Assembly: GCF_006345805.1 (NCBI RefSeq) | Contig: NC_043004.1 | Location: 12,400,001 to 12,464,000, forward strand | Length of the DNA stretch: 64,000 bases | From: Octopus sinensis | Taxonomy: Eukaryota | Direction: 5' to 3' | Shown here: positions 5,137-62,176 of the stretch, piece by piece | Layout: each line of letters starts with the position of its first letter | Position numbering within the stretch: the first letter of the stretch is position 1 | Program-made: the position numbers and the translations under genes | The notes under the pieces: generated by a model | What the model was told of the DNA's origin: nothing | What the model saw: the letters and a program-made list of their open reading frames with translations, nothing else | Database searches by the model: none

Positions 5137-5236
5137 NNNNNNNNNNNNNNNNNNNNNNNNNNNNNNNNNNNNNNNNNNNNNNNNNNNNNNNNNNNNNNNN
5201 NNNNNNNNNNNNNNNNNNNNNNNNNNNNNNNNNNNN
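5137..5236. other. Assembly gap (100 N)
   Basis: Run of N. It interrupts a copy of the R4-like LINE 3' tail starting at ~5110 (aaagtacgctgttgttgatgttgaaat). Confidence 0.99.
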
Positions 5237-14724: not shown

Positions 14725-14954
14725 TGGCTGTGTGGTAAGTAGCTTGCTTACCAACACCATGGTTCCGGGTTCAGTCCCATTGCGTGGCGTCTTGGGCAAA
14801 TATCTTCTAATAAAGCCTCGGACCGACCAAAGCCCTGTGAGTGGATTTGGTTGACGGAAACTGAAAGAAAGCCGTCGTATATGTGTATATATATATATAC
14901 ATATATATATGTGGTGTGTGTGTGTATATATGCATGTATAAATATAAATGTTAT

Positions 14955-14987
<33 letters not shown>

Positions 14988-15012
14988 TATATATTACATA
15001 TAATATATATAT

Positions 15013-15043
<31 letters not shown>

Positions 15044-15283
15044 GTAGGTATATGTATGTGTTTGTTTAAGTTTCTGTGTCTGTGTTTGTGCTCCCATCAT
15101 CGCTTGACAACCGATGCTAGTGCGTTTACGTCCCTGTAACTTAGCGGGTCTCCAAAAGAGGCCGATAGCATAAATACTAGGCTTACAAAGAATAAATCTT
15201 GTGGTGGATTTGATCGACTAATGGTGGTGCTCCAGTATCGCCGCAGTCAAACGAGTGAAGCCATAAAAGAATAAAAGAATAAA
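14725..15283 (+). mobile_element. Full-length OR-like tRNA-derived SINE with internal (TA/TG)n
   Basis: Pol III A-box-like tggctgtgtggtaag, B-box-like ggttcagtccc, internal microsatellite, tail gccgcagtcaaacgagtgaag and (taaaaga)n. Confidence 0.9.
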
Positions 15284-15936: not shown

Positions 15937-16419
15937 GTATGCATAGGTGTGTTTGTGTGTATGTGTGCGTTTGTGTATGAGTGAGTATACATACACATAG
16001 AAGCATATAAAAATATATTATATGTGTACACGTATATATGTAGTATAAACGCATGCATACACATATACGTATATATGTGTATATGGATGCATATTTACGC
16101 GTATATGTAGGAATATATAAACCCATGTATGTATCCATATATACACATAGGTACGCATTTATGGAAATCTATTTCGAAATATATGCTTTTATGCATATGT
16201 GTATGTATGCGCCTGTGTGTGTGTGTGGCTGTGAATGCGTGTGTGTGCCTGCGTGCGTGTGTGTACATATATATGTATATACAGGTAGACAGGTAGAGAG
16301 ATAAATACACATATACACAGATAGATGCATAATATATACATGCACACATAGATGCATACACACATATATACGTACATAGATACATACACAGAGGCATACA
16401 TGCATACATCTGTATATAT

Positions 16420-19388
16420 ATTTAAATATATATGCGCATGTCTAGATATGCAACTATATGCATGAGAATACATACAGGCATAAAGCAAAACATAAATTTG
16501 CACATATGCGTACATACACACATACATACATACACACATACATACATACATACATACATACATACATACACACATACATACATACATACATACATACATA
16601 CATACATACACACATACATACATACATACATACTACATACATACATACATACATACATACACCTACATACATACATACATACATACATACATACATACCA
16701 CATACATACATACATACATACATACACAAATACATACATACATACATACATACATACATACACATACATACATACACACATACAAACATACAATACATAC
16801 ATACCACATACATACATACACACATACATACATACATACATACATACATACATACACACATACATACACATACACACATACATACATACATACATACATA
16901 CATACATAATACATACACACATACATACATACATACATACATACATACACACATGCATACATACATACATACATACATACACCCATACATACAACATACA
17001 TACATCATACATACATACATACATACATACACACATACATACATACATACATCATACATACATACATACACACATACATACATACATACATACATACATA
17101 CATACATACACACATACATACATACATACATACATACATACATACATACATACATACATACACACATACATACATACATACATACATACACACATACATA
17201 CATACACACATACATACATACATACATACATACATACATACATACACACATACATACATACACACTACATACATACATACATACATACATACATACACCA
17301 CACTACATACATACATACATACATACATACACACATGCATACATACATACATACATACATACATACACACATACATACATACCACATACATACATACATA
17401 CATACATACATACACACATACATACATACATACATACATCACACATACATACATACATACATACATACATACACACATACATCATACATACATACATACA
17501 CACATACATACATACCACATACATACATACATACATACATACCAATACATACATACATACATACATATTACATACATACACACATACATACACACATCAT
17601 ACATACATACATACATACATACATAATACATACATACATACACACATACATACACACATACATACACACATACATACACACATACATACACACATACATA
17701 CATACATACATACATACATACACACATATACATACACACATATACATACATACATACATACATACATACATACATACACACATACATACATACATACATA
17801 CATACACACATACATACATACATACATACATACATACATACATACATACATACATACATACATACATACATACATACACACATACACACATACATACATA
17901 CATACATACATACATACATACACACATACATACATACACACATACATACATACATACATACATACATACATACATACATACATACATACACACATACATA
18001 CATACATACAACATACATACATACATACATACATACATACATACACACATACATACATACATACATACATACATACATACATACATACATACACACATAC
18101 ATACATACATACATACATACATACATACATACCACACACATACATACATACATACATACATACATACACACATACATACATACATACATACATAACATAC
18201 ATACATACATACATACATACATACATACATACATACATACATACACACATACATACATACATACATACATACATACACACATACATCATACACCATACAT
18301 ACATAACATATACATACACAATACATACATACATACATCACACATGCATACATACATACATACATCATCATACATACACACATACATACATACATACATA
18401 CATACATACACACATACATACAACACCCATACATACTACATACATACATACATACATACATACATACATACACACATACATACATACATACATACATACA
18501 TACATACACACATACATAACAACATACACACATACATACATACATACATACATACATACATACACCATACACACATACATCATACATACATACATACATA
18601 CATACACACATACTATACACACATACACTACATACATACATACATACATACATACATACATACATACATACACAACATACATACATACATACATACATAC
18701 ATACATACATACATACATACATACACACATACATACATCATACATACATACATACATACATACATACATACATACACACATACATACATACATACATACA
18801 TACTACATACACCACCACATACATACATACATACATACATCACACATACATACATACATACATACATACACACATCATACATACATACATACATACATAC
18901 ATACATACATACAACATACATACATACACACATACATACATACACACATACATACATACACATACATACATACATACATACATACATACATACATACATA
19001 CATACATACATACATACACACATACATACATACCTACATACATACATACACATATACATACATACACATACATACATACATACTAAACACATACATACAT
19101 ACATACATACATACATACATACATACACACTACATACATACATACATACATACATACATACATACACACATACATACATACACACATACATACATAATAC
19201 ATACATACATACATACATACATACATACATACATACACACATACATACGTACATACATACATACATACATACATACATAAAATTACCCTGTTGTTGATGC
19301 TGAAATTCCAGTAAAGGTTCCTTGAATCTAGGTTAGAAACCGACTCCTCTATTGGCAAAAAATCTTGAAATAAAACTGAACAATAACA
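16420..19388 (+). mobile_element. 3' UTR-only copy of R4/Dong-like LINE with ~2.8-kb internal (CATA)n expansion
   Basis: Head atttaaatatatatg..catgtctaga.atg.aactatatgcatgagaatac and tail ccctgttgttgatg.tgaaattcc...ttgaaataaaactgaacaat both match 41011-41348, which directly follows the LINE stop codon. Confidence 0.8.
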
Positions 19389-25904: not shown

Positions 25905-26295
25905 TTATTTTTATTTGCTCCAGTCATTAGACTGTGGCCATGCTGGGGCACCACCCCGAAGAACTTTAAGTCGAATGAATGGATCCCAGTACTTATTTTT
26001 ACTTTTTATTTTTGTTTTTGAGCCTGACACTTATTCTATCGGATACTTTTGCCGAACTGCTATGTTATGAGGATGTAAACTCACCGACACCGGTTGACAA
26101 GCGGTGATGGGGGTCAACAACAGACACAAACACACGCAGTGGACGTGCTTCTTTCAGTTTCCAGCTGCTAAATGCACTCACAAGGGTTTGGTAAGTTCGA
26201 GGCTATAGTAGAAGACACTTTCACAAGGTGCCAAGCAGTGAGACTGAACCCAGAACCATGTGGCTGGAAAACAAAACTTCTTACCACACAACCAC
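25905..26295 (-). mobile_element. OR-like SINE
   Basis: ccagtcattagactgtggccatgctggggcacc...gactgaacccagaaccatgtgg...cttaccacacaacc. Confidence 0.85.
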
Positions 26296-27019: not shown

Positions 27020-27362
27020 CTCTTTTAATCATTTACTTGTTTCAGTCATTTCACTGCAGCCGTACTGGAGCACCGCATTTAGTCGAGCAAATCGAACCCA
27101 GGACTTGTTCTTTGTAAGCCTAGTACTTATTCTATCGGTCTCTCTTGCCGAACCGCTAAGTTACGGGGACAAATATATTAGCATCGGTTGTCAAGTGATG
27201 TTGGGGGAGGGGACAAACACAGAGACACAAACATATATACACACATACATATATACATATACATATATACGACGGGCTTCTTTCAGTTTCCGTCTACCAA
27301 ATCCACTCACAAGGCTTTGGTCGGCCCGAGACTATATTAGAAGATAACTTGCCCAAAGTGCA
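27020..27362 (-). mobile_element. OR-like SINE with truncated head
   Basis: ttgtttcagtcatttcactgcagcc...gacgggcttctttcagtttccgtctaccaaatccactcac. Confidence 0.85.
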
Positions 27363-27366
27363 AGAG

Positions 27367-27529
27367 TGGCTGTGTGGTAAGTAGCTCGCTTACCAGCGTT
27401 CAGTCCCTTCAGTCTCACTACGTGGCACCTAGGACAAGTGTCTTCTGCTATAGCCTCGGGTTGACTAAAGTCTAGTGAGGAGACTTGGTAGACGGAAACT
27501 GAAAGAACCCCGTCGTGTGTATATATATA

Positions 27530-27604
<75 letters not shown>

Positions 27605-27812
27605 TATGTATGTATATGTATGTGTGTGTATATGTTTGTGTATCTGTGTTTGACTCCAACATCACTTGACAACCGATGCTGGGGTGTTTATGTCCCCGTA
27701 ACTTAGCGGTTCGGCAAAAAATAATAAGTCCTGGTCTCTATTTACTCGACTAAAGCGGTGCTCCAGCATGGCCGCAGTCAAATGACTGAAACAAGTAGTA
27801 GAATAAAAGAAT
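27367..27812 (+). mobile_element. OR-like SINE, head-to-head with the previous copy
   Basis: gtggctgtgtggtaagtagc...ggccgcagtcaaatgactgaaacaagtag. Confidence 0.88.
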
Positions 27813-33744: not shown

Positions 33745-34200
33745 CTTTTACTTGTTTCAGTCATTGGACTGCGGCCATGCCGGGGCACAGTCTTGTGGAA
33801 TCTTAGTCGAAAGAATCGACCTCAGTACTTGGTTTTTATTATTTTTAAAACGCGTACTTATTCTATCGGACGGTTTTGCCGAATAGCTAATTTAGGGGAC
33901 GTAAGTATAGTAACGCCGGTCGTCAAGTGGTGGTGAGGGACAAATACAGATACAAAGACACAAACACACACACATAAATATATAATACTTACATATACAC
34001 ATACATGCACACACATCCCGCACACACATATAGACGACGGGCTTCTTTCAGTTTCAGTTTACTAAATTCACTCACATGGCTTTGGTCAGTCCTAGGCTAT
34101 GGTAGAAGACACTTGTGCAAGGTGTCACGCAGTGGAACTGAACCCGGAACCATGTGGTTGGGAAACAAGCTTCTTAACACACAACCACTCCAGCGCCTAT
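33745..34200 (-). mobile_element. OR-like SINE
   Basis: ttgtttcagtcattggactgcggccatgc...gaacccggaaccatgtggttgggaaacaagc. Confidence 0.85.
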
Positions 34201-34284
34201 AGCATGTTGTAGTATTTAGTTAGTTACTGACCTTTACGTTTGGATTCCAATCTCACCAAGTTTAACCTTGCATTTTAGCACTAT

Positions 34285-37904: not shown

Positions 37905-38149
37905 GGCTCTCTTACTCTTTTTACTCTTTTACTTGATTCAGTCATTTGACTGTGGCCATGCCGGAGCACCGCCTTTAGTCGAGCAAATCGACCCCAGGAC
38001 TTATTCTTTGTAAGCCTAGTACTTATTCTATCGGCCTTTTATGCCAAACGCTAAGTTACCGGGGCGTAAACACACCAGCATCGGTTGTCAAGCGCTGTTG
38101 GGGGGACAAACACAGACACACAAACATACACACACACACACCACACACA

Positions 38150-38225
<76 letters not shown>

Positions 38226-38400
38226 CATACATATATACGACGGGCTTCTTTCAGTTTCCGCCTACCAAATCCACTCACAAGGGCTTGGTCGGGCCGAGGC
38301 TATACTAGAAAACACTTGCCCAAGGTGCCACGTAGTGGGACTGAACCCAGAACCATGAGGTTCGTCAGCAAGCTACTTACCACACAGCCACTCCTACGCC
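37905..38400 (-). mobile_element. OR-like SINE
   Basis: ttactcttttacttgattcagtcatttgactgtggcc...ctacttaccacacagccactcc. Confidence 0.9.
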
Positions 38401-38748
38401 TGTATAATAACCATAAAGAATGTTATTCTATAATGCTATAATAATGCTACTATAATGCTATCACCAACTTAAACCTGGTGTACGATGCAGAAACAAATAT
38501 TGCGGACTGATTTTAAGACCTGTTATCCTCAATCATCGTGTTAGATTATCCTTATGTATGTATGTATGTATGTATGTATGTATGTATGTATGTATGTATG
38601 TTTGCATGTATGTATGTATGTATGCATGTTTGCATGTATGTGTGTATCTGCATACATAGGTACATATCCATAAACCCAGAATACATGTGATAAAACAATC
38701 CTAGAAACGAATATATATATGCGTGTGTCTGTGCGTGTATATATATAT

Positions 38749-38805
<57 letters not shown>

Positions 38806-39269
38806 AGCGTGTGTCTGTGCGTGTGTGTATGTATGTATGTATATATATATATACATACATACATATGTGGTGTGTGTATGGGTATGTGTGTATGTGTGTG
38901 TGTGTGTGATTGTGTGTGTGTATGCTTGCGTATATATGAATGTATACGTGTATTTGTGTTTACGTTTGCGTAAATATCGGTGTACGAGTTACGCGTGTTT
39001 GAGCGCAAGTATGTCTGTGTGTATGCAAGATTTCCCGCCGGCTTTCCAGCTGGATGGAAATAACTGTAGCTCTTCTACGAAGGAGTATGTCTAATAGTGA
39101 TGTGTTTTAATGAGTAATGCATGCTTGGTTTGTTGTGCTGTTGAAATCATTCGTGAAGAAATTGCGAACTAAGCCGGCGTCTACAGATCTTCTCCTCTCT
39201 CGCCGTTGTTACTGCACTTTGCTATTCTTTCTTCTTGCTAATGATGTTATTGATGATACGCCGTTTTCA

Positions 39270-39381
39270 GGTGATGACGATAATGATGATTATGATGATG
39301 ATTATGATGATGATGATGATGATAATGATGTGTTATGCTCTTATTTTCGTTCTGTTGTTGTTGCTAATGATGATGATGGTA

Positions 39382-39415
<34 letters not shown>

Positions 39416-39828
39416 CGACGACGACGACGATGATGATGATGGCGACGATGATGATGACGACAATAACGACAACGATGCTGATGATGGTGATGATGGTGAT
39501 GAAGATGATGATGATGTCGATGAGGATAACGAAGGTGATGATGTTGATGATGATGATGACGATGATGATGCTGATGCTGATGATTATGATGATGGTAATG
39601 ATGATGATAATGATGATGATGATGATGATGATGATGACGACGACGACGACGATGCTGCTGCTGCTGATGATGATGTTGGTGATGATGGTAACAATGATAT
39701 TGATAGTGGTGGAAGTGGTAATGTTGATGATGATTATGATGATGATGACGACGACGACGATGATGGTGATGATGACGATGATGATGACGACGACGATGAT
39801 GATGATGATGATGGCGATGATGATGGTA

Positions 39829-39890
<62 letters not shown>

Positions 39891-39924
39891 GGTGGTGATG
39901 ATGATGATGATGATGATAATGATG

Positions 39925-39956
<32 letters not shown>

Positions 39957-40025
39957 GATGATGATGATGACGATGATGATGATGATGGTGATGATGATGA
40001 TGATGATGATGCTGATGCTGATGGT
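39270..40025. repeat. ~750-bp (GAT)n-dominated trinucleotide array
   Basis: Direct reading; source of the poly-Asp, poly-Met and poly-His ORFs. Confidence 0.95.
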
Positions 40026-40274
40026 ATAATGAGAAACGCATAGCTGCAGATCTGCTAGTCCGTCTGAAACTTACGTGTACTGATTGACTGTTTTTAGCGT
40101 TTGCATTGGAATTCCTGTTGTTTATCGAATCGTCAAGAGATTCGGAGTTTAGAGACAAGCATACCTACATAGCGGACATGTACACAAACACACTCACATA
40201 TATACGTACATACATGCACAGTCACACACACATACACGTACATACATACATACATACATACATACATACATACA

Positions 40275-42494: not shown

Positions 42495-42759
42495 TCTTTT
42501 ATTTGCTTCAGTCATTTGACTCCGGTCATGCTGGAGCACCGCGTTTAGTCGAACAAATCGACCCCAGGACTTATTCTTTTTGTAAGCTTATATTCTTTTG
42601 TAAGCCTAATACTTATTGTATCAATCTTATTTTCCGAACCGCTAAGTTACGGGGACGTAAACACACCAACATCAGTTGTGAAGCGATAGTGGGGTGACAA
42701 ACACAGACACACAAACATATATATGTGCATGTATATATATACATATCACCATTTATTGA

Positions 42760-42797
<38 letters not shown>

Positions 42798-42809
42798 ATA
42801 TATATATAT

Positions 42810-42848
<39 letters not shown>

Positions 42849-43025
42849 ATATATATATATATATACAACGTGCCTCCTTCAGTCTCCGTCCACCAAATGC
42901 ACTCACAAGGCTTTGGTCGGGCTGAAGCTATAGTAGAAGACACTTACCCTAGATGCGAGGCAGTGGGACTGAACCCAGCAGCATGTGGTTGGAAGCAAGC
43001 GTCTTACCATACAGCCACTCCTGCG
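42495..43025 (-). mobile_element. OR-like SINE
   Basis: tttgcttcagtcatttgactccggtcatgctggagcacc...cttaccatacagccactcc. Confidence 0.85.
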
Positions 43026-43348
43026 TCTACGTGAGATTTTGCATTATTTTACCAGGCCTATCATAAATGGATTTACGATCCGTTCAAAGGATGTACTGTG
43101 CCTCCAACATGAAGGTACTTACGTATTTATGTATTATTTTTCTTGTTTATTGGTGTTGTGTGCGCTTATGCGCTTTTGAGTAATATTGTCTTATAATTTT
43201 ACACCTCATTGCCTAATAGCCATAGTAATATTCACAATTCGAAACAGCTGTAAATGTTAACGTATTACTACATCATGTCATATGTTACAACGCATGTAAA
43301 TATATCTATACATTTATGGTTATTCACATCTCTTTATATGTGTTTGTG

Positions 43349-43661: not shown

Positions 43662-44333
43662 CTTGCATAATATCTGAGAGCAGAATAAATTAGGAGATTC
43701 GGTTACAAAATTTATATATCATAACATAACACATTACATGTCTTTACACGTGTTTCGTTAGCGTGTACTCGTATGCCGTGCAGTAATCGTTACATAATCG
43801 ACTGCATAATTACGCTTGCTTATCAGAAAATAAATATAATTTAATCCATTATTGGTTACCAGTCAATTGGTTGTTAGAACCAAAGTGGTCTTTACTCTGT
43901 ATTCGAATATACACTCTGTAATTTATTCAAATGTGTATCATACCAAACGAAAATGGGAGGATCCAACTGGGAAATGGATATTATGTATCTACTTAAAGCT
44001 CTAAGAAATTGGCATGCTTTCCTATTCAAAATAACTTTTCAATATATATATATATAACTTAGATAAAACTTAGATATGTTTCGACCAAAGATTGCTCCAG
44101 GCCATGTCTAATTTCATAGCACCACCTGATAGGATTATCTAAATTCTGTTTAAGCCAAGTTTTGTTTATGGTCCATTCAAGTAGTGAGTTCTTACTGTGT
44201 GAGTATCCAACCATGGGTGGCTTATCCGGTATTCCTTGAAGAAATCTGTCCAGACTCCGTTTCTTTCAGGACAATGTTAAACAGGGCAGAGCCTGTTGAG
44301 AAAAAGAATTTATACATACACACACACACACAC

Positions 44334-44377
<44 letters not shown>

Positions 44378-44611
44378 ACACATATATATATATATATATA
44401 TAATTATAAATCTCAGAGCGAGTTATAAACAGTAGCGGTAACACATCGTGACGCATATTTGCCATTTGAATATGGCTAACCCCTAAGGGTGGATGCTACT
44501 GTAGTTTGTAGCCCCAGGAAGATATCTCCTCCAGCTGGCTATAGACACACTATCTGTGTCCTCTCAGTATTTGTGAAGGGGAGTCATCCTCCCCGTCTTC
44601 AACTCATGATA

Positions 44612-44656
44612 CACACGGACCCGAGTTTCAAGGTGTTTACCTTTCATCAGCGTGTG
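44612..44656 (-). ncRNA. Type I hammerhead ribozyme (canonical core)
   Basis: CACACG-CTGATGA-AAGGT aaac ACCTT-GAAAC tcgg GTC-CGTGTG. Confidence 0.85.
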
Positions 44657-44960
44657 ACAATCATGGTTGTCGACGAGAAGTCAGCTCCCTTCAAATACCG
44701 ACAGGACGCAGATAGTGTGTCTATAGCCAGCTGGAGGAGATATCTTCCTGGGGCTACAAACTACAGTAGCATCCGCCCTTAGGGGTTAGCCATATTCAAA
44801 TGGCAAATATGCGTCACGATGTGTTACCGCAACTGTTTATAACTCGCTCTGAGATTTATCATTGTTTGATTTCACTTTTTCAATATCAGTGTCAATCGAC
44901 AATGGAAAAAGTATATGTATTTGTGAAGGGAGCTGACTTCTCGTCGATAACCATGATTGT

Positions 44961-45005
44961 CACCCGCTGATGAAAGGTAAACACCTTGAAACTCAGGTCC
45001 GGGTG
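44961..45005 (+). ncRNA. Type I hammerhead ribozyme (canonical core)
   Basis: CACCCG-CTGATGA-AAGGT aaac ACCTT-GAAAC tcag GTC-CGGGTG; predicted cleavage after 44999. Confidence 0.88.
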
Positions 45006-45297
45006 TATCATGAGTTGAAGACGGGGAGGATGACTCCCCTTCACAAATACTGACAGGACACAGATAGTGTGTCTATAGCCAGCTGGAGGAGATATCTTCC
45101 TGGGGCTACAAACTACAGTAGCATCCATCCTTAGGGGTTAGCCATATTCAAATGGCAAATATGCGTCAGGATATATATATATATTTGCACATTTTGAATT
45201 TGTTAGTGATGGCAGTCTGAACGGGTCATCTGAGGTGATAAGTCGCCAAAGGGTATGTTCTTTCTTTTTAGTGCGTCCAAATCCAAAATAAGAAATG

Positions 45298-45358
45298 TTG
45301 AGCTGACGAAAGAAATGCTGAGTTTATTTGGCTAATCTAGAAACGTTAACGTACTCAA
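45298..45358 (+). ncRNA. Type I hammerhead motif, copy 1
   Basis: TTGAG-CTGACGA-[imperfect stem II]-GAA-ACGTTAACGT-A-CTCAA. Confidence 0.6.
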
Positions 45359-45860
45359 ATAATCTTTGTACTTGTGATATTTTTCTGTTTTTACCTCCAT
45401 ACCTTCGTGAGCTATTTTGAGTAAACATTATCTGAGAGAAATTTTCTTTAAGTAGTGGAAATGGCTAAAAAACTTTTTTGGCTGCTATTTCTAGAAAGTT
45501 CAGTATGTGGCAAAGTAATTTATTTTACTAAGCCCTAATTATATAATGTAATATTTTGAATTCGCCTTAAATGGTCCTTTTACATACTGAATACTTGGTG
45601 AAATTGATTAATAACTAATTAATTTTACCCTCAATTGTTGATATTATAATTCATTTCTCTCTGTCATATTGCCTCGGTTCTCACCGTTAAAATATAATGT
45701 TTGCTAGATAGCCCACGTGGGTGGAAGGGGAGAGCAGGAATCTTCACTTGCACATTTTGAATTTGTTAGTGCTGGCAGTCTGAACGGGTCATCTGAGGTG
45801 ATAAGTCGCCAAAGGGTATGTTCTTTCTTTTTAGTGCTTCCAAATCCAAAATAAGAAATG

Positions 45861-45921
45861 TTGAGCTGACGAAAGAAATACTGAGTTTATTTGGCTAATC
45901 TAGAAACGTTAACGTACTCAA
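45861..45921 (+). ncRNA. Type I hammerhead motif, copy 2
   Basis: Same motif, 563 nt downstream. Confidence 0.6.
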
Positions 45922-46105
45922 ATAATCTTTGTACTTGTGATATTTTTCTGTTTTTACCTCCATACCTTCGTGAGCTATTTTGAGTAAATTTCTTTAAGAA
46001 ATTTTCTTTAAGTAGTGGAAATGGCTAAAAAACTTTTTTGGCTGCTATTTCTAGAAAGTTCAGTATGTGGCAAAGTAATTTATTTTACTAAGCCCTAATT
46101 ATATA

Positions 46106-46138
<33 letters not shown>

Positions 46139-46207
46139 AATATATATATGCATATATCTATCTATCTATCCATCTAACTCTATTTATCTATATATATATA
46201 TGTATAT

Positions 46208-46279
<72 letters not shown>

Positions 46280-46299
46280 ATATGTATATGTAAGTGTGT

Positions 46300-46500
46300 A
46301 TATATGTGTGTATGTTTGTGTGTCTGTTTTTGTTCCCTCACTATCAGTTGACAACCGATGTTGGTGTGTTTATGTCCCCGTAACTTAGAATATGTACTAT
46401 GCTTACAAAGAATAAGTCCTGGGGTCGACTTGTTCGACTAAAGGTTTTGGTCCAGCTTGGCCGCGGTCAAAGGACTGAAGCAAATAAAAAATAAAAGAGC
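46300..46500 (+). mobile_element. 3' part of OR-like SINE with internal deletion
   Basis: ttgacaaccgatgttggtgtgtttatgtccccgtaacttag...ggccgcggtcaaaggactgaagc. Confidence 0.75.
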
Positions 46501-50374: not shown

Positions 50375-51448
50375 TTTCTTCTTTCAGCTTGAGAGCTGCG
50401 GCCATGATGGAGCACCGCCATTTGCTTTGCTACACTTTCACTAAACCTCCTCTGATGTGTGGCATTTGGTGAATGAGGGAGTTTGATGTTGCTGCCTTCA
50501 TCTGCGTTTCTTGCCGCGAGGTAGGTTTATCCGGAACTCATGACAGATGGAGATCCAGTATTGTTTTGAAGACGCCTAGATCCACGCCATGTAGGTCTCT
50601 CAGGATCTTCAGGTGGATATTGAAGAGTTGCGAGCTTCTGAAGCCCAAGCTGGTGATGGCAATGTTGGGATTTTTGGTACTATGCAGCAGCGCCCCGCTC
50701 TGCTACTTGAGGGACTTTCGATGCTACAGTTTAGTAGAAGTTCAAGGATTTTCTAGATGTATGTTACTGCGTATTTTCCCACCTTCGTTCTAGCTAGTAG
50801 AATGTAGTAGAACTTGTTCAGCCTCTTAAAGTAGCTGATATATCGCATTGAACCGATCTTCTTTGAAAAGCCTCGCTGAATTGCTTTGTGTAGTTCCGTC
50901 ATTAATTTTATACTGTGTGGTGGCCACAGTTGGGACTAGTAATACAAACTGAGGATGAATATATTCCAGAGGACTATCATGGTTTTCTGTTCTCTCATTC
51001 TGAACGTTCGAAGGATCCATCCGACCAATCGTCTACATTTTACTGCCATCTTAGTAATATGCACTGGAAAGATGCATGTCAATGACCGGGTCGCGTACCG
51101 ATTTTGCTTCAGGTATTGCAGTCCTTCCTGGGCCAGTGTATCATGTCTGCTTTTCATTGGTCTTCGTGTGTTTGTAGCGCAGGGCTAGGAATTTTCCAGC
51201 ATTATACTGTATGTTATTTTCCTCAGCCCATCTGTTTATTGCGTTCAACTCCTGTTGCAAATGACAACGTCTCCAGGGTCTCGTATCCTCTGTGTGATCT
51301 GTATAGCTATCAAGGGTGGTTACCTGAGCAGCTGAGGACATGTCTGAGAGGGCCACTATGAATAGCAGCGGTCCCCAGACAGTGCCCTGTCAAACACCAC
51401 TCATTATTTGTATTTCCTTAAAAGTGGCCAACACTACCTGACTTCTAT
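50375..51448 (-). pseudogene. Older CR1/L2-group LINE, 3' part (continues at 53758)
   Basis: RSQVV..IMSGV*QGTVWGPLLFIVALSDM, LNAINRWAEENNIQYN, LVGWILRTFR, LGFRSSQLFNI; tail tggcggtgctccatcatggccgcagctctcaagctgaaag. Confidence 0.85.
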
Positions 51449-53757
51449 CGATTGGCCCGCATCAATTTGTACAACATCTTCCCGGTTCGGCCAGGCCCTT
51501 CTTGACGTGGCTGAAGATTGTTTTCTATCGCAACATGTTGAATATCCGACAAGGCATCGGTCTGGGCAGCAGCCATCTATGCTAGATCTGGTATTCTCCC
51601 GCTATCCAAGATCAGTGTCAGACGTATCTGTGTGCGCCCCTCTTGCCAAGAGTGATCATGCGGTCCTGAAGTTCGTCATGCACACAACTTTTTCCACGCC
51701 CACGATTACTTCGCTGCCACGTAGAGTCTTCTCTGCAATTAATCTTGAAATTCTAACCGAGGCTTCCGCGCTTCTGGACTGGCGTTCCCTGATGACGTTG
51801 TCCTCAGTTGACGAACTATGGTCATCCCTCAAAGCATATGTAATCTGTTTGACTGACCAGGCAGTTCCCGTTGGACTTCCCAAGAGAAAGAAACACAAGC
51901 CCTGGGTGACGAAGAAGGTTAAACGAGAACGTCGACTCAGAGATATTGCTTGGGCTGAATTCAAAAATCTGGATTCGACTGCAGCTTTTGAGGTGTACAA
52001 AACTCAACGAGACCGAGCCGTGAAAATTGAAAAGAAAGAACGCTTCAGTTATGAATACAAAATCGCGGCAAATGCCAGTAGCAATCCAAAAACCTTCTTT
52101 GCCCATGTCCAGTGGATTTCCCGCTTGAACAACCAGATTGCAACGTTGGTAGACTCAACAGGCGTATCGATTGAGGACCCTTATCAACAGAGTCAATTAT
52201 TTGCCGAGGCTTTTTCAACTATTTTCAAACAAGATGATGGTCGTGAACCCCCTCCATTTGATAGAGCGGTACCTCCAATGCTTCGATTGATCATCACGCG
52301 GGACCAAGTCAAACGTGTTATTCAAGGCCTCGATGTCAACAAGGTCACGGCCCTGACGGCATACACCCACGGGTTATCAAAGCGTTGGCTCCGGTCATCT
52401 GCGAGCCCTTAACACGACTATTCAATATGTCATTGGCGACGGGTGTTATACCTGCAGACTGGAGAACAGCGATAATCTGCCCAATTTTCAAGAAAGGGAG
52501 CCGCGAAGACCCGCTTAACTACCGACCGGTTTCCCTTACATCAATAATCAGCAAGATGTTCGAAACCATCCTTAAGAAAAGTATGATGCTCCACCTCCTA
52601 AACACAGCCTCGATCACTGATTCCCAACACGGCTTCGTGCCGAAGAGATCATGCTTGACCAACTTACTAGTAATGGAAGAATTGGTGACGCGCATCCTCG
52701 ATGATAGTGATGCTGTTGACATCGTTTTATTGGACTTTGCCAAAGCTTTTGACTCGGTAAGCCACCGCCTACTACTTGTCAAGCTTCAAGCATATAGTTT
52801 CCATCCGGATATTGTACGATGGGTTGGTGCCTTCCTCTCAGATCGCTCCTTCCAAGTTCAAGTTAATGGTTCGCGGTCCGACGTCTCCAGTGCGAGCAGT
52901 GGCGTGCCTCAAGGTTCAGTGCTTGGGCCCTTGTTGTTCTTAGACTTCATAAATGACTTGCCCGACGACCTCACGCAACACACCCTTCTATTTGCCGACG
53001 ATATCAAACTGGTCGCTCCTCGCGGTAGTATAGAGGATCTTCGTCGATGCCTCCACCAATTTGGAAGTGGTCTAACGATTGGGACCTGTGTCTGAACGTG
53101 TCAAAGTGCTGTCATCTGCCTGTCGGCTCTACTCCTGCAACTCAACTTGATTTCGAGCCGGGTCGTCTGCTGCTGGAGAGGACCGATCAGGTAAATGACC
53201 TGGGTATCTTGGTGGATTCCTCCTTTTCGCCTTCGGCCCAGTGCGTCCATGCTGCCAACAAAGCGCGCGGAATTCTGTTTTTGATTCGACGGTCATTCGG
53301 AATGCTCACAGCAGCCATATTCCTGGCACTCTATGTCACGCTGGTGAGACCCATATTGGAGTATGGGATTCAAGCCTCTTCTCCTTATCTCCTCAAAGAC
53401 ATACAGCACCTCATTCTCGCCCACAACATCATAAGCGGGAAGTGTAACCTCTCGAAAGAGCTGTTCTTCACTCCTGCTCCGGAGCGTCGGCTGCGGGGTC
53501 ATTCCGAAAAGCTCTACCTGCGACGATTTCATCTCAATCGAAGGAGAGGAGCTTTCTCCGTCCGGGTTGCGGATCCGTGGAACAAGCTGCCAGACGAGAT
53601 GGTGAAGATGCCGACGACCGCTTTGTTCAAAGCCTCCCTGGACCTCAAGTGGCCTGAACTCTTTACATGAACACCACCCTGTACTTAACTCCATGTCCCT
53701 CTACATGGCCTTGCTATTTGCTTTTGAGCCAAATTAACTAACTAACTAACTAACTAA
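51449..53757 (+). mobile_element. Younger 5'-truncated CR1-like LINE (endonuclease end plus RT), frameshifted, with (TAAC)n tail
   Basis: ORFs 51408-52412, 52385-53095, 53047-53670 carry LDLVFS/SDH (APE end), NYRPVSLTS, DFAKAFDSV, GVPQGSVLGPLLF, FADD, RVADPWNKLP; ends (taac)6. Confidence 0.92.
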
Positions 53758-59269: not shown

Positions 59270-59485
59270 TTTACTCTTTTACTTGTTTCAGTAATTTGAC
59301 TGCGGCCATGCTGGAGCACCGCCTTTAATCGAGCAACTCGACCTCGGGACTTATTCTTTTTGTAAGCCCAGTACTTATTCTATCAGTCTCTTTTGCCGAA
59401 CCGCTAAGTGACGGGCACGTAAACGCATCAGCATCGGTTGTCAAGCAATGCTAGGGGGACAAACACAGACACACAAACACACACG

Positions 59486-59517
<32 letters not shown>

Positions 59518-59690
59518 CATATATACGACAGGCTTCTTTCAGTTTCCGTCTACCAAATCCACTCACAAGTCATTGGTCGGCCCGGGGCTATAGCAGAAGA
59601 CACTTGCCCAAGATGCCACGCAGTGGGACTGAACCCGGAACCATGTGGTTGGTAAGCAAGCTAATTACCACACAGCCAGTCCTACGCCTA
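59270..59690 (-). mobile_element. OR-like SINE
   Basis: ttactcttttacttgtttcagtaatttgactgcggccatgctggagcaccgcc...ttaccacacagcca. Confidence 0.9.
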
Positions 59691-61815: not shown

Positions 61816-62047
61816 ATATATATATATATAATATATATATATATAGATTATATATTATATATATATATATATATACATACGGCAAGGCATATTTGTGACT
61901 CAAACGAAATTGATAATTGTGTTTATATGAGTGCAAGTCCATGTGTTTGTGTTTGTGTGTATTCATATATGTATGCATGTATGTATGTATGTATATATGT
62001 ATACACATATACATACATATGTGTGTGTGTGTATGCACATATTTATA

Positions 62048-62176
62048 GGCGCAGGAGTATCTGTGTGGTATGTAGCTTGGTTCCCAACCACATTGTTCCG
62101 GATTCAGTCCCACAGCGTGGCACCTTGGGCCAAGTGTCTTCTACTATAGCATCGGGCCGACCAATCCCTTGTGGGA
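62048..62176 (+). mobile_element. Head of OR-like SINE
   Basis: ggcgcaggagtatctgtgtggta...ggattcagtccc...cgggccgaccaatcccttgtg. Confidence 0.75.

What the first reader, a model, noticed from the sequence alone, without database searches (positions are those of the whole stretch)
44612..45005. Two canonical type I hammerhead ribozymes with a compensatory base-pair change in stem I
Seen: both copies have intact CUGAUGA and GAAAC cores, an identical 5-bp stem II (AAGGU/ACCUU, AAAC loop) and a GUC triplet. Stem I is CACCCG/CGGGUG in the + copy and CACACG/CGUGUG in the - copy, so a C-G pair is replaced by A-U through two coordinated substitutions; loop III also varies (UCAG/UCGG). Stem I extends past an internal loop (CATGA/TCATG). 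Established: this is the type I hammerhead topology found in Penelope-like elements and metazoan non-LTR retrozymes, and loop-loop contacts speed up cleavage. Inference: covariation points to selection for folding, so this is a functional self-cleaving RNA family. I do not recall one described for octopus.
Basis: partly seen in the sequence, partly recalled or inferred. Interest (0 to 1): 0.88.

Follow-up and report, generated by a model that had tools for sequence, protein, structure and literature searches.

The report
Inverted hammerhead ribozyme retroelement copies
Two genuine copies of the classic animal-type (type I) hammerhead self-cutting RNA motif sit head-to-head inside a small, protein-less retroelement insertion of the sort spread by Penelope-like elements; it is a well-described kind of genomic repeat, not a new ribozyme class.

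Summary
Two 45-nt motifs (+ 44961-45005; - 44656-44612) carry an intact hammerhead core (CUGAUGA, GAAA, GUC), a 6-bp helix I, an identical helix II and a 2-bp helix III with a tetraloop. A structural descriptor finds only these two in the window and none in 300 shuffles. Rfam hammerhead models match both, but only below their gathering scores.

The motifs are not independent genes. They lie in a 770-bp non-coding composite insertion (44402-45172) within a (TA)n microsatellite. It consists of one inverted copy plus a 1.37-unit partial tandem (period 352 nt), and one outer end extends 43 nt further than the other. This matches published Penelope-like element and non-LTR retrozyme insertions, whose canonical type I hammerheads look the same.

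The C-G to A-U compensatory change in helix I is real. It rests on two sequences only, with a chance probability of about 1% under random placement, and a formal covariation test has no power.

I could not retrieve further copies or confirm the organism. Verdict: a new member of a known kind; self-cleavage is plausible but untested, and probably weak as a monomer.

The parts
44314..44401 (.). (CA)n then (TA)n microsatellite forming the left flank, taken as the insertion target
   Evidence: Sequence read. (TA)n also lies at the right flank, 45171-45186.
44402..44444 (-). 43-nt 3' extension ('tail') of the inverted copy. It is also present in the middle copy (44821-44863) but absent from the right copy.
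   Evidence: Inverted repeat I2, 172-nt arms, 97% complementary; three-way alignment.
44445..44573 (-). 129-nt non-coding body segment (a') of the inverted copy
   Evidence: Inverted repeat I1: 249 nt, 97% complementary to 44924-45172.
44566..44700 (-). Hammerhead-bearing hairpin, minus-strand copy (extended helix I with an internal loop)
   Evidence: RNA fold -60.3 kcal/mol, z -6.6; fold constrained to the active hammerhead.
44612..44656 (-). Minimal type I hammerhead, minus copy. Helix I is CACACG/CGUGUG and loop III is UCGG. Predicted cleavage after C44618.
   Evidence: Rfam Hammerhead_1 22.1 bits, model 1-45, E 0.001 on a 67-nt slice.
44692..44863 (+). Middle copy of body segment a' plus the 43-nt tail. 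It has no hammerhead of its own and forms the 172-bp inverted repeat with 44402-44573.
   Evidence: Repeats D7 and I2; alignment A1.
44864..44916 (+). 53-nt spacer. It is either the remainder of a 352-nt tandem unit or host DNA between two insertions; unresolved.
   Evidence: Direct-repeat spacing of 352 nt (D7). No other copy in the window.
44917..45051 (+). Hammerhead-bearing hairpin, plus-strand copy
   Evidence: RNA fold -65.1 kcal/mol, z -7.8; constrained active fold -59.0 kcal/mol.
44961..45005 (+). Minimal type I hammerhead, plus copy. Helix I is CACCCG/CGGGUG and loop III is UCAG. Predicted cleavage after C44999.
   Evidence: Rfam Hammerhead_HH9 25.4 bits, E 5.7e-5 on a 67-nt slice.
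45044..45172 (+). Right copy of body segment a'. It ends 43 nt short of the other two copies, directly at (TA)n.
   Evidence: D7: 96% identical to 44692-44820; alignment A1.

Best explanation
The locus at 44402-45172 is one composite, non-coding insertion of a hammerhead-bearing retroelement that depends on Penelope-like element (PLE) machinery. It is either a non-LTR retrozyme or a derivative of a PLE pseudo-LTR.

Shown:
- two intact canonical metazoan type I hammerhead motifs, each at the tip of a hairpin of about 50 bp
- a head-to-head arrangement of an inverted copy next to a 1.37-unit partial tandem (period 352 nt)
- a 43-nt extension at only one outer end
- (TA)n on both flanks
- no protein domain within about 1 kb on either side

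Inferred mechanism at the family level:
1. Tandem source copies are transcribed as multimers.
2. The hammerhead cuts after GUC. It may work best as a dimer through an extended helix III, which the UCGG loop allows.
3. This releases unit-length RNA with 5'-OH and 2',3'-cyclic phosphate ends, which a host RNA ligase can circularise.
4. A PLE reverse transcriptase/GIY-YIG endonuclease copies the RNA into (TA)n sites. It primes from both DNA strands and from two internal start sites, which would produce the inverted-plus-tandem structure and the one-sided tail.

Inferred for this locus:
- The two local copies are probably inert relics. They face away from each other, so no single transcript carries two same-sense ribozymes, and no unit-length RNA can be excised here.
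- The helix I compensatory change most likely reflects diversity among folding-competent source RNAs.
For: - Motif: an intact core and three helices in both copies. Hammerhead-clan Rfam alignments reproduce the same helices.
- Architecture match: it fits the published description of 'canonical' metazoan hammerheads (helix I 6 bp, helix II 4 bp, helix III 1-2 bp with a 2-4 nt loop, dimeric action). That paper also reports dual hammerheads 100-700 bp apart on opposite strands (PMC4209133).
- Repeat layout: I1 249 nt at 97%, I2 172 nt at 97%, D7 with period 352.
- PLE insertion signatures described in the literature (PMC8557442):
  - partial tandems plus an adjacent inverted 5'-truncated copy
  - a 30-40 bp tail at one end
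  - a bias for (TA)n/(CA)n microsatellite targets
- PLE enzymology (PMC11167929): the enzyme extends both DNA strands and starts reverse transcription at two internal sites, and the interval between them is the tail.
- Retrozyme properties: units of 170-400 nt, about 350-390 nt in mussel, GC below 45%, highly self-paired (PMC7229834). Here the unit is 352 nt, GC 0.429, with a circular MFE of -120 kcal/mol (z -6.4).
- No coding capacity: no Pfam domain in any frame across 43.4-46.4 kb.
- Dimer helix III: the octamer ACUCGGGU self-pairs over 8 bp at -8.9 kcal/mol.
- Substitution pattern: all four differences within the hairpin spare pairing and the core (p about 0.013).
- Retrozymes as PLE derivatives: bioRxiv 10.64898/2026.07.22.740005.
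Against: - Both copies fall below Rfam gathering scores, and neither is seen in whole-window or 1-kb scans.
- The 10.1-11.1 pair is A-U, where the Rfam consensus and my recollection of natural hammerheads have G-C. This may lower activity.
- The nearest-neighbour MFE pairs core CUGA with loop III (UCAG/UCGG). It is 6 kcal/mol more stable than the active fold.
- In the plus copy, loop III (UCAG) gives a poor dimer helix III (-1.4 kcal/mol).
- Only one tandem junction is seen, so the 352-nt unit is not proven.
- No PLE reverse transcriptase is present in the window. The only RT belongs to an AP-endonuclease LINE.
- No further family copies could be retrieved. Multi-copy status, expression and cleavage are therefore all untested.
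Confidence: 0.75

Rival explanations
1. There were two separate insertions of a solo, SINE-like element of about 300 nt (5' hammerhead hairpin + body + tail) into the same microsatellite. One is a symmetric inverted pair (44402-44863) and the other a single copy (44917-45172). The 53-nt spacer is host DNA, so there is no 352-nt tandem unit and the retrozyme label does not apply.
For: - All copies begin, or switch orientation, exactly at the 5' base of the hammerhead hairpin. That could mark a true 5' end.
- Both arms of the inverted pair end at the same tail position.
- The spacer has no other copy in the window.
Against: - The spacer shows no microsatellite character although both outer flanks are (TA)n.
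- The left and right copies share three states against the middle copy, which does not fit a simple 'pair plus single' history.
- A 352-nt period matches the published mollusc retrozyme size.
Confidence: 0.25
2. The motifs are decayed or intrinsically inactive hammerhead look-alikes. The RNA does not self-cleave at a meaningful rate, and the compensatory change arose by chance or by a mutational mechanism rather than by selection on RNA folding. One such mechanism is hairpin-templated (quasi-palindrome) correction, or gene conversion between the arms of the DNA palindrome.
For: - Rfam scores are sub-threshold.
- The helix II base pair is A-U.
- A competing fold sequesters C3-A6.
- Published PLE minimal hammerheads show low in vitro activity.
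- With two sequences the covariation control has no power.
- Helix I is part of a DNA quasi-palindrome, where templated double changes are mechanistically possible (established knowledge, not tested here).
Against: - All 13 core positions are intact in both copies despite 2.8% divergence.
- Zero of four hairpin substitutions break a pair or hit the core (p about 0.013).
- The internally looped helix I extension and the A-rich loop II resemble the features that allow monomeric cleavage in newt and Schistosoma ribozymes.
Confidence: 0.2
3. The locus is the remnant of an autonomous Penelope-like element. The copies would be pseudo-LTRs whose RT/GIY-YIG ORF was lost by 5' truncation or deletion, not a dedicated non-autonomous family.
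For: - Hammerheads sit in PLE pseudo-LTRs.
- Heavily 5'-truncated copies with an inverted partner are typical of PLEs.
Against: - No RT or GIY-YIG signal in any frame within about 1 kb either side.
- A 352-nt direct period without an ORF is not what a truncated 3-4 kb unit would give.
Confidence: 0.15
4. The 172-bp near-perfect inverted repeat with a ribozyme in its loop is a functional hairpin-RNA locus. It would be a source of small RNAs or an RNA-editing substrate, and would have been retained for that role.
For: I2 arms are 172 nt and 97% complementary, with a 118-nt loop holding the minus hammerhead. The whole region folds very stably.
Against: - This structure is the expected by-product of PLE integration.
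- There is no evidence of conservation or expression.
- The only miRNA-model hit is 24.8 bits against a gathering score of 130.
Confidence: 0.04

Closest known systems
Metazoan non-LTR retrozymes (Cervera & de la Pena 2020, PMC7229834), e.g. the Mytilus galloprovincialis 350-390 bp repeats
   Same: - Type I hammerhead with a 2-bp helix III and a tetraloop
- Non-coding unit of about 350 nt with GC below 45%
- Strongly self-paired predicted RNA
- Mollusc precedent
- Co-occurrence with PLEs
   Different: - Only 1.37 units are present, and one copy is inverted, so there is no pair of same-sense ribozymes.
- circRNA formation and copy number are untested.
- The sequence is unrelated to anything I could retrieve.
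Hammerheads in Penelope-like element pseudo-LTRs (Cervera & de la Pena 2014, PMC4209133; Craig et al. 2021, PMC8557442)
   Same: - Inverted-plus-tandem insertion architecture
- One-sided tail
- (TA)n target
- Dual hammerheads a few hundred bp apart on opposite strands
   Different: - No RT/GIY-YIG ORF is present.
- The motif is the 'canonical' type I form (6-bp helix I, helix III present). It is not the 'min-HHR' form with a long helix II and no helix III that is typical of many PLEs.
Newt satellite 2 and Schistosoma Sm-alpha type I hammerheads
   Same: - Helix I open and extended past an internal loop
- A-rich loop II
- Very short helix III that favours dimeric cleavage
- Residence in short dispersed or tandem repeats
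   Different: - Helix II starts with A-U instead of G-C.
- Helix I continues into an unusually long hairpin of about 50 bp.
- The loop nucleotides match the archetypal tertiary-contact pattern only partly (UUGU/UAU against UUAC/UAC in the HH9 consensus).
Rfam Hammerhead_1 (RF00163) and Hammerhead_HH9 (RF02275), clan CL00010
   Different: - Scores are 22.1 and 25.4 bits, below the gathering scores of 34 and 52.
- Neither copy is reported in window-scale scans.

Membership tests
Hammerhead ribozyme, type I (Rfam clan CL00010) | Conserved catalytic core: C3 U4 G5 A6 N7 G8 A9 ... G12 A13 A14 ... A15.1-U16.1, with H17 at the cleavage site | tested here: met
   Both copies read CUGAUGA ... GAAA ... 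GUC.
Hammerhead ribozyme, type I (Rfam clan CL00010) | Three helices around the core, with helices II and III closed by loops and helix I open | tested here: met
   The descriptor hit has a 6-bp helix I, a 4-5-bp helix II and a 2-bp helix III. There were 0 hits in 300 shuffles. Constrained folds agree.
Hammerhead ribozyme, type I (Rfam clan CL00010) | Covariance-model score at or above the curated gathering score | tested here: not met
   No hit on the window at gathering score. On slices: Hammerhead_1 22.1 bits against 34 and HH9 25.4 bits against 52.
Hammerhead ribozyme, type I (Rfam clan CL00010) | G10.1-C11.1 pair at the base of helix II (strongly preferred, not absolute) | tested here: not met
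   A-U in both copies (AAGGU/ACCUU). The Rfam consensus has G...C.
Hammerhead ribozyme, type I (Rfam clan CL00010) | Loop 1 / loop 2 tertiary contacts | tested here: inconclusive
   An internal loop (UUGU/UA) in helix I and the loop II sequence (U)AAAC(A) partly resemble the HH9 and Hammerhead_1 consensus. No 3D or kinetic test was possible.
Hammerhead ribozyme, type I (Rfam clan CL00010) | Mg2+-dependent self-cleavage 3' of position 17 | not testable with these tools
   Needs in vitro transcription.
Metazoan non-LTR retrozyme | Type I hammerhead within a short (170-400 nt) non-coding unit of low GC | tested here: met
   Period 352 nt, GC 0.429, and no Pfam domain in six frames.
Metazoan non-LTR retrozyme | Head-to-tail tandem arrangement with at least two same-sense hammerheads | tested here: not met
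   There are only 1.37 units. The upstream ribozyme is on the opposite strand.
Metazoan non-LTR retrozyme | Multi-copy family expressed as circular RNA | not testable with these tools
   There are no other copies in the window. External collections returned nothing.
Penelope-like element (autonomous) | ORF with a telomerase-like RT and a GIY-YIG endonuclease | tested here: not met
   No domain across 43.4-46.4 kb. The only RT in the window carries an AP-type endonuclease.
Penelope-like element (insertion signature) | Partial tandem plus an adjacent inverted 5'-truncated copy | tested here: met
   Repeats I1, I2 and D7 and alignment A1, compared with PMC8557442.
Penelope-like element (insertion signature) | A 30-40 bp tail at only one end; microsatellite target | tested here: met
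   The left end extends 43 nt further than the right end, slightly above the published 30-40 bp. (TA)n lies on both flanks.

The most novel reading that the evidence does not exclude
The near-perfect 172-bp inverted repeat with a self-cleaving hammerhead in its loop (44402-44863) is a retained functional unit. In this reading, ribozyme cleavage in the loop would convert a hairpin transcript into a two-strand long dsRNA, feeding small-RNA or A-to-I editing pathways. That would be an exapted 'ribozyme-opened hairpin RNA' rather than transposon debris.
Probability: 0.04. Interest if true: 0.6.

Novelty: new member of a known kind. Interest (0 to 1): 0.22.

Why it matters
This is a clean example of how hammerhead ribozymes travel in animal genomes. 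One 770-bp locus shows a canonical type I motif together with three insertion signatures attributed to Penelope-like element machinery:
- an inverted copy next to a partial tandem
- a one-sided tail
- a (TA)n target

If the window is from a cephalopod, it would add a lineage-specific family to the retrozyme/PLE catalogue. It would also give annotators a seed that current Rfam thresholds miss. It does not change what is known about ribozyme classes or mechanisms.

Tried and rejected
Searches for more family copies (all failed):
- Protein-space trick with the 97-aa ORF spanning the element: no candidates.
- Exact look-ups of that ORF and of a LINE ORF: not on record.
- The 26-nt core pattern returned 0 hits in each collection:
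  - viral contigs
  - metagenome contigs
  - GTDB genome contigs
- A looser pattern in metagenomes gave 18 hits. None has helices I or II, so all are chance.
- BLAST of the unit against the window found only the three local copies.

Organism identification:
- The LINE RT's best homologues are about 52% identical and come from assorted animals and metagenomes. The octopus origin is neither confirmed nor refuted.

Other negatives:
- Formal covariation counting on the two-sequence alignment has no statistical power.
- miRNA-precursor reading rejected: MIR9481 scored 24.8 bits against a gathering score of 130. That is a generic hairpin match.
- Protein-coding reading of ORF 44489-44782 rejected: it simply runs through the palindrome and has no homologues.
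- Supplement searches of the two key papers for octopus or this helix II sequence found nothing.
I repeated it with X at the stops.

Full report

Yes. Reading 44400-45200 shows both motifs.

- Plus strand, 44961-45005: CACCCG-CUGAUGA-AAGGU-AAAC-ACCUU-GAAA-C-UCAG-G-UC-CGGGUG.
- Minus strand, 44656-44612: the same string, except helix I is CACACG/CGUGUG and loop III is UCGG.
- The 26-nt core-plus-helix-II string occurs exactly twice in the 64-kb window, with none expected.
- A loose core pattern gives 3 hits against 0.33 expected; two of them are these sites.
- I wrote a descriptor requiring the core, a 6-bp helix I, a helix II of at least 4 bp and a closed helix III. It finds only these two sites, and none in 300 dinucleotide-preserving shuffles on both strands.
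It then extends into a hairpin of about 135 nt (-65.1 and -60.3 kcal/mol, z -7.8 and -6.6).

**2. What do the curated models say?**

- Rfam gives nothing at gathering score on the whole window.
- In a 1-kb E-value scan it gives no hammerhead hit, only chance-level miRNA hairpin matches.
- On 67-nt slices, where the filters are lax, both copies match the hammerhead clan:
  - Hammerhead_1: 22.1 bits over the full model 1-45 for the minus copy, against a gathering score of 34.
  - Hammerhead_HH9: 25.4 bits for the plus copy, against a gathering score of 52.
- The shortfall comes mainly from helix II, which starts with A-U where the consensus has G-C, and from the loops.
- So every sequence and structure criterion for a hammerhead is met, but the family's curated score threshold is not.

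**3. What surrounds the motifs?**

The motifs are not free-standing. Repeat analysis, direct comparison, BLAST of the unit against the window and a three-way alignment resolve the layout as follows.

| Coordinates | Feature |
|---|---|
| 44314-44401 | (CA)n then (TA)n microsatellite |
| 44402-44693 | Inverted copy: 43-nt tail, 129-nt body, hammerhead hairpin on the minus strand |
| 44692-44863 | Middle copy: body plus tail, plus strand |
| 44864-44916 | 53-nt spacer |
| 44917-45051 | Plus-strand hammerhead hairpin |
| 45044-45172 | Right copy of the body |
| from 45171 | (TA)n again |

- The left and right copies are 97% identical over 249 nt.
- The left and middle copies form a 172-bp inverted repeat, 97% complementary.
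- The direct period between the middle and right copies is 352 nt.
- No Pfam domain is detectable in any of six frames from 43.4 to 46.4 kb.
- The only reverse transcriptase in the window belongs to an AP-endonuclease LINE at 51.4-53.7 kb.

**4. How does this compare with what is known?**

*The motif*
- Cervera and de la Pena (PMC4209133) describe the 'canonical' metazoan hammerhead as type I. It has a 6-bp helix I, a 4-bp helix II, loop-loop contacts, and a 1-2-bp helix III capped by a small, often palindromic loop. It therefore tends to act as a dimer.
- The same paper notes dual motifs 100-700 bp apart on opposite strands in Schistosoma.

*Retrozymes*
- The 2020 retrozyme paper (PMC7229834) places such ribozymes in non-coding tandem units of 170-400 nt with GC below 45%.
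- These include about 5000 copies in 350-390-bp repeats in a mussel, expressed as circular RNA.

*Penelope-like element (PLE) insertions*
- Craig et al. (PMC8557442) describe PLE insertions as partial tandems with an adjacent inverted 5'-truncated copy. They have a 30-40-bp tail at one end and a bias for (TA)n/(CA)n targets.
- The 2024 enzymology paper (PMC11167929) shows that a PLE enzyme extends both DNA strands. It starts reverse transcription at two internal RNA sites, and the interval between them is the tail.
- A 2026 preprint argues that animal retrozymes derive from PLE pseudo-LTRs.

Every one of these structural signatures is present in this locus.

**5. How likely is self-cleavage?**

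*For*
- The core is intact in both copies.
- Helix I has an internally looped extension and loop II is A-rich. These features allow monomeric cleavage in newt-type ribozymes (PMC6155905).

*Against*
- The 10.1-11.1 pair is A-U.
- The nearest-neighbour MFE pairs core CUGA with loop III. It is about 6 kcal/mol more stable than the active fold.
- Helix III is only 2 bp.

*Dimer mode*
- In dimer mode the minus copy's octamer ACUCGGGU self-pairs over 8 bp (-8.9 kcal/mol).
- The plus copy's ACUCAGGU does not (-1.4 kcal/mol).
- The G-to-A difference in loop III lies in a CpG, so UCGG may be the older state (inference).

At this locus the two ribozymes point away from each other. No single transcript can hold two same-sense copies, and unit-length RNA cannot be excised here.

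**6. How strong is the covariation claim?**

- The left and right copies differ at 7 of 249 positions. Four of these lie in the hairpin:
  - the C-G to A-U double change in helix I
  - a U.G to C-G change in the helix I extension
  - the loop III A/G difference
- None of the four breaks a pair or touches the core.
- Random placement gives the following probabilities:
  - about 1.3% for at least one compensated double change among 7 substitutions
  - about 1.3% for four hairpin substitutions that are all harmless
  - about 0.3% for four substitutions that break no pair and include a compensated double
- On the two-sequence alignment, 43 of 49 pairs never vary and the shuffle control is uninformative (266/500).
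- The result is suggestive, post hoc, and open to non-selective explanations. These include templated correction within a DNA quasi-palindrome and gene conversion.
- If both copies were made in one event from one RNA, the changes arose in a dead copy. If they came from different source RNAs, which I consider more likely given the heterogeneity reported for retrozyme RNAs, the pair reflects selection on the sources.

**7. What could not be done?**

- I could not obtain more family members or identify the organism.
- The literature held here has no paper describing hammerheads in octopus specifically.
- It does report 235 Hammerhead_1 hits in the giant squid genome and 31 recently active Penelope-like families in Octopus vulgaris.

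**8. Verdict**

This is a real pair of canonical metazoan type I hammerhead motifs inside a composite, non-coding, PLE-type insertion. It works like, and most probably belongs with, the non-LTR retrozyme / PLE pseudo-LTR hammerheads.

- It fails the Rfam score threshold.
- As it stands in this locus, it fails the tandem same-sense criterion for a retrozyme.
- Novelty is limited to a probably lineage-specific family. Interest is low to moderate.

Noticed in passing
window 45185-45550 and 45748-46110: A tandem duplication with a period of about 563 bp and 99% identity lies immediately to the right of the hammerhead element. It has no protein domain and no obvious relation to the element.
   Followed up: partly
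window 14725-15146, 26142-26295, 27146-27716, 33952-34201, 38040-38460, 42637-43028, 46195-46388, 59394-59689, 62040-62173: A dispersed SINE-like repeat family with at least 10 copies at 70-89% identity. ARAGORN found no tRNA-like head anywhere in the window.
   Followed up: partly
window 51408-53670: A frameshifted LINE with AP-type endonuclease (Exo_endo_phos_2) and RVT_1 domains. Its best database relatives are only about 52% identical. It is not a Penelope-like element.
   Followed up: partly
window 16400-19300: A tetranucleotide (TACA/TATG-type) microsatellite of about 3 kb with strong strand asymmetry (GC skew about -0.7). It produces very long spurious ORFs.
   Followed up: no
window 5137-5236: A run of exactly 100 N, i.e. 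an assembly gap.
   Followed up: no
window 39117-40043: A trinucleotide-repeat tract that reads as a 308-aa poly-Asp/Asn ORF on one strand and poly-His on the other. It is most likely low-complexity DNA, not a gene.
   Followed up: no
window 44967-44970 with 44993-44996, and the equivalent positions in the minus copy: Core nucleotides CUGA are complementary to loop III (UCAG/UCGG) in both copies. This gives a predicted inactive conformer 6 kcal/mol below the active fold. It could act as a built-in monomer-off / dimer-on switch.
   Followed up: partly
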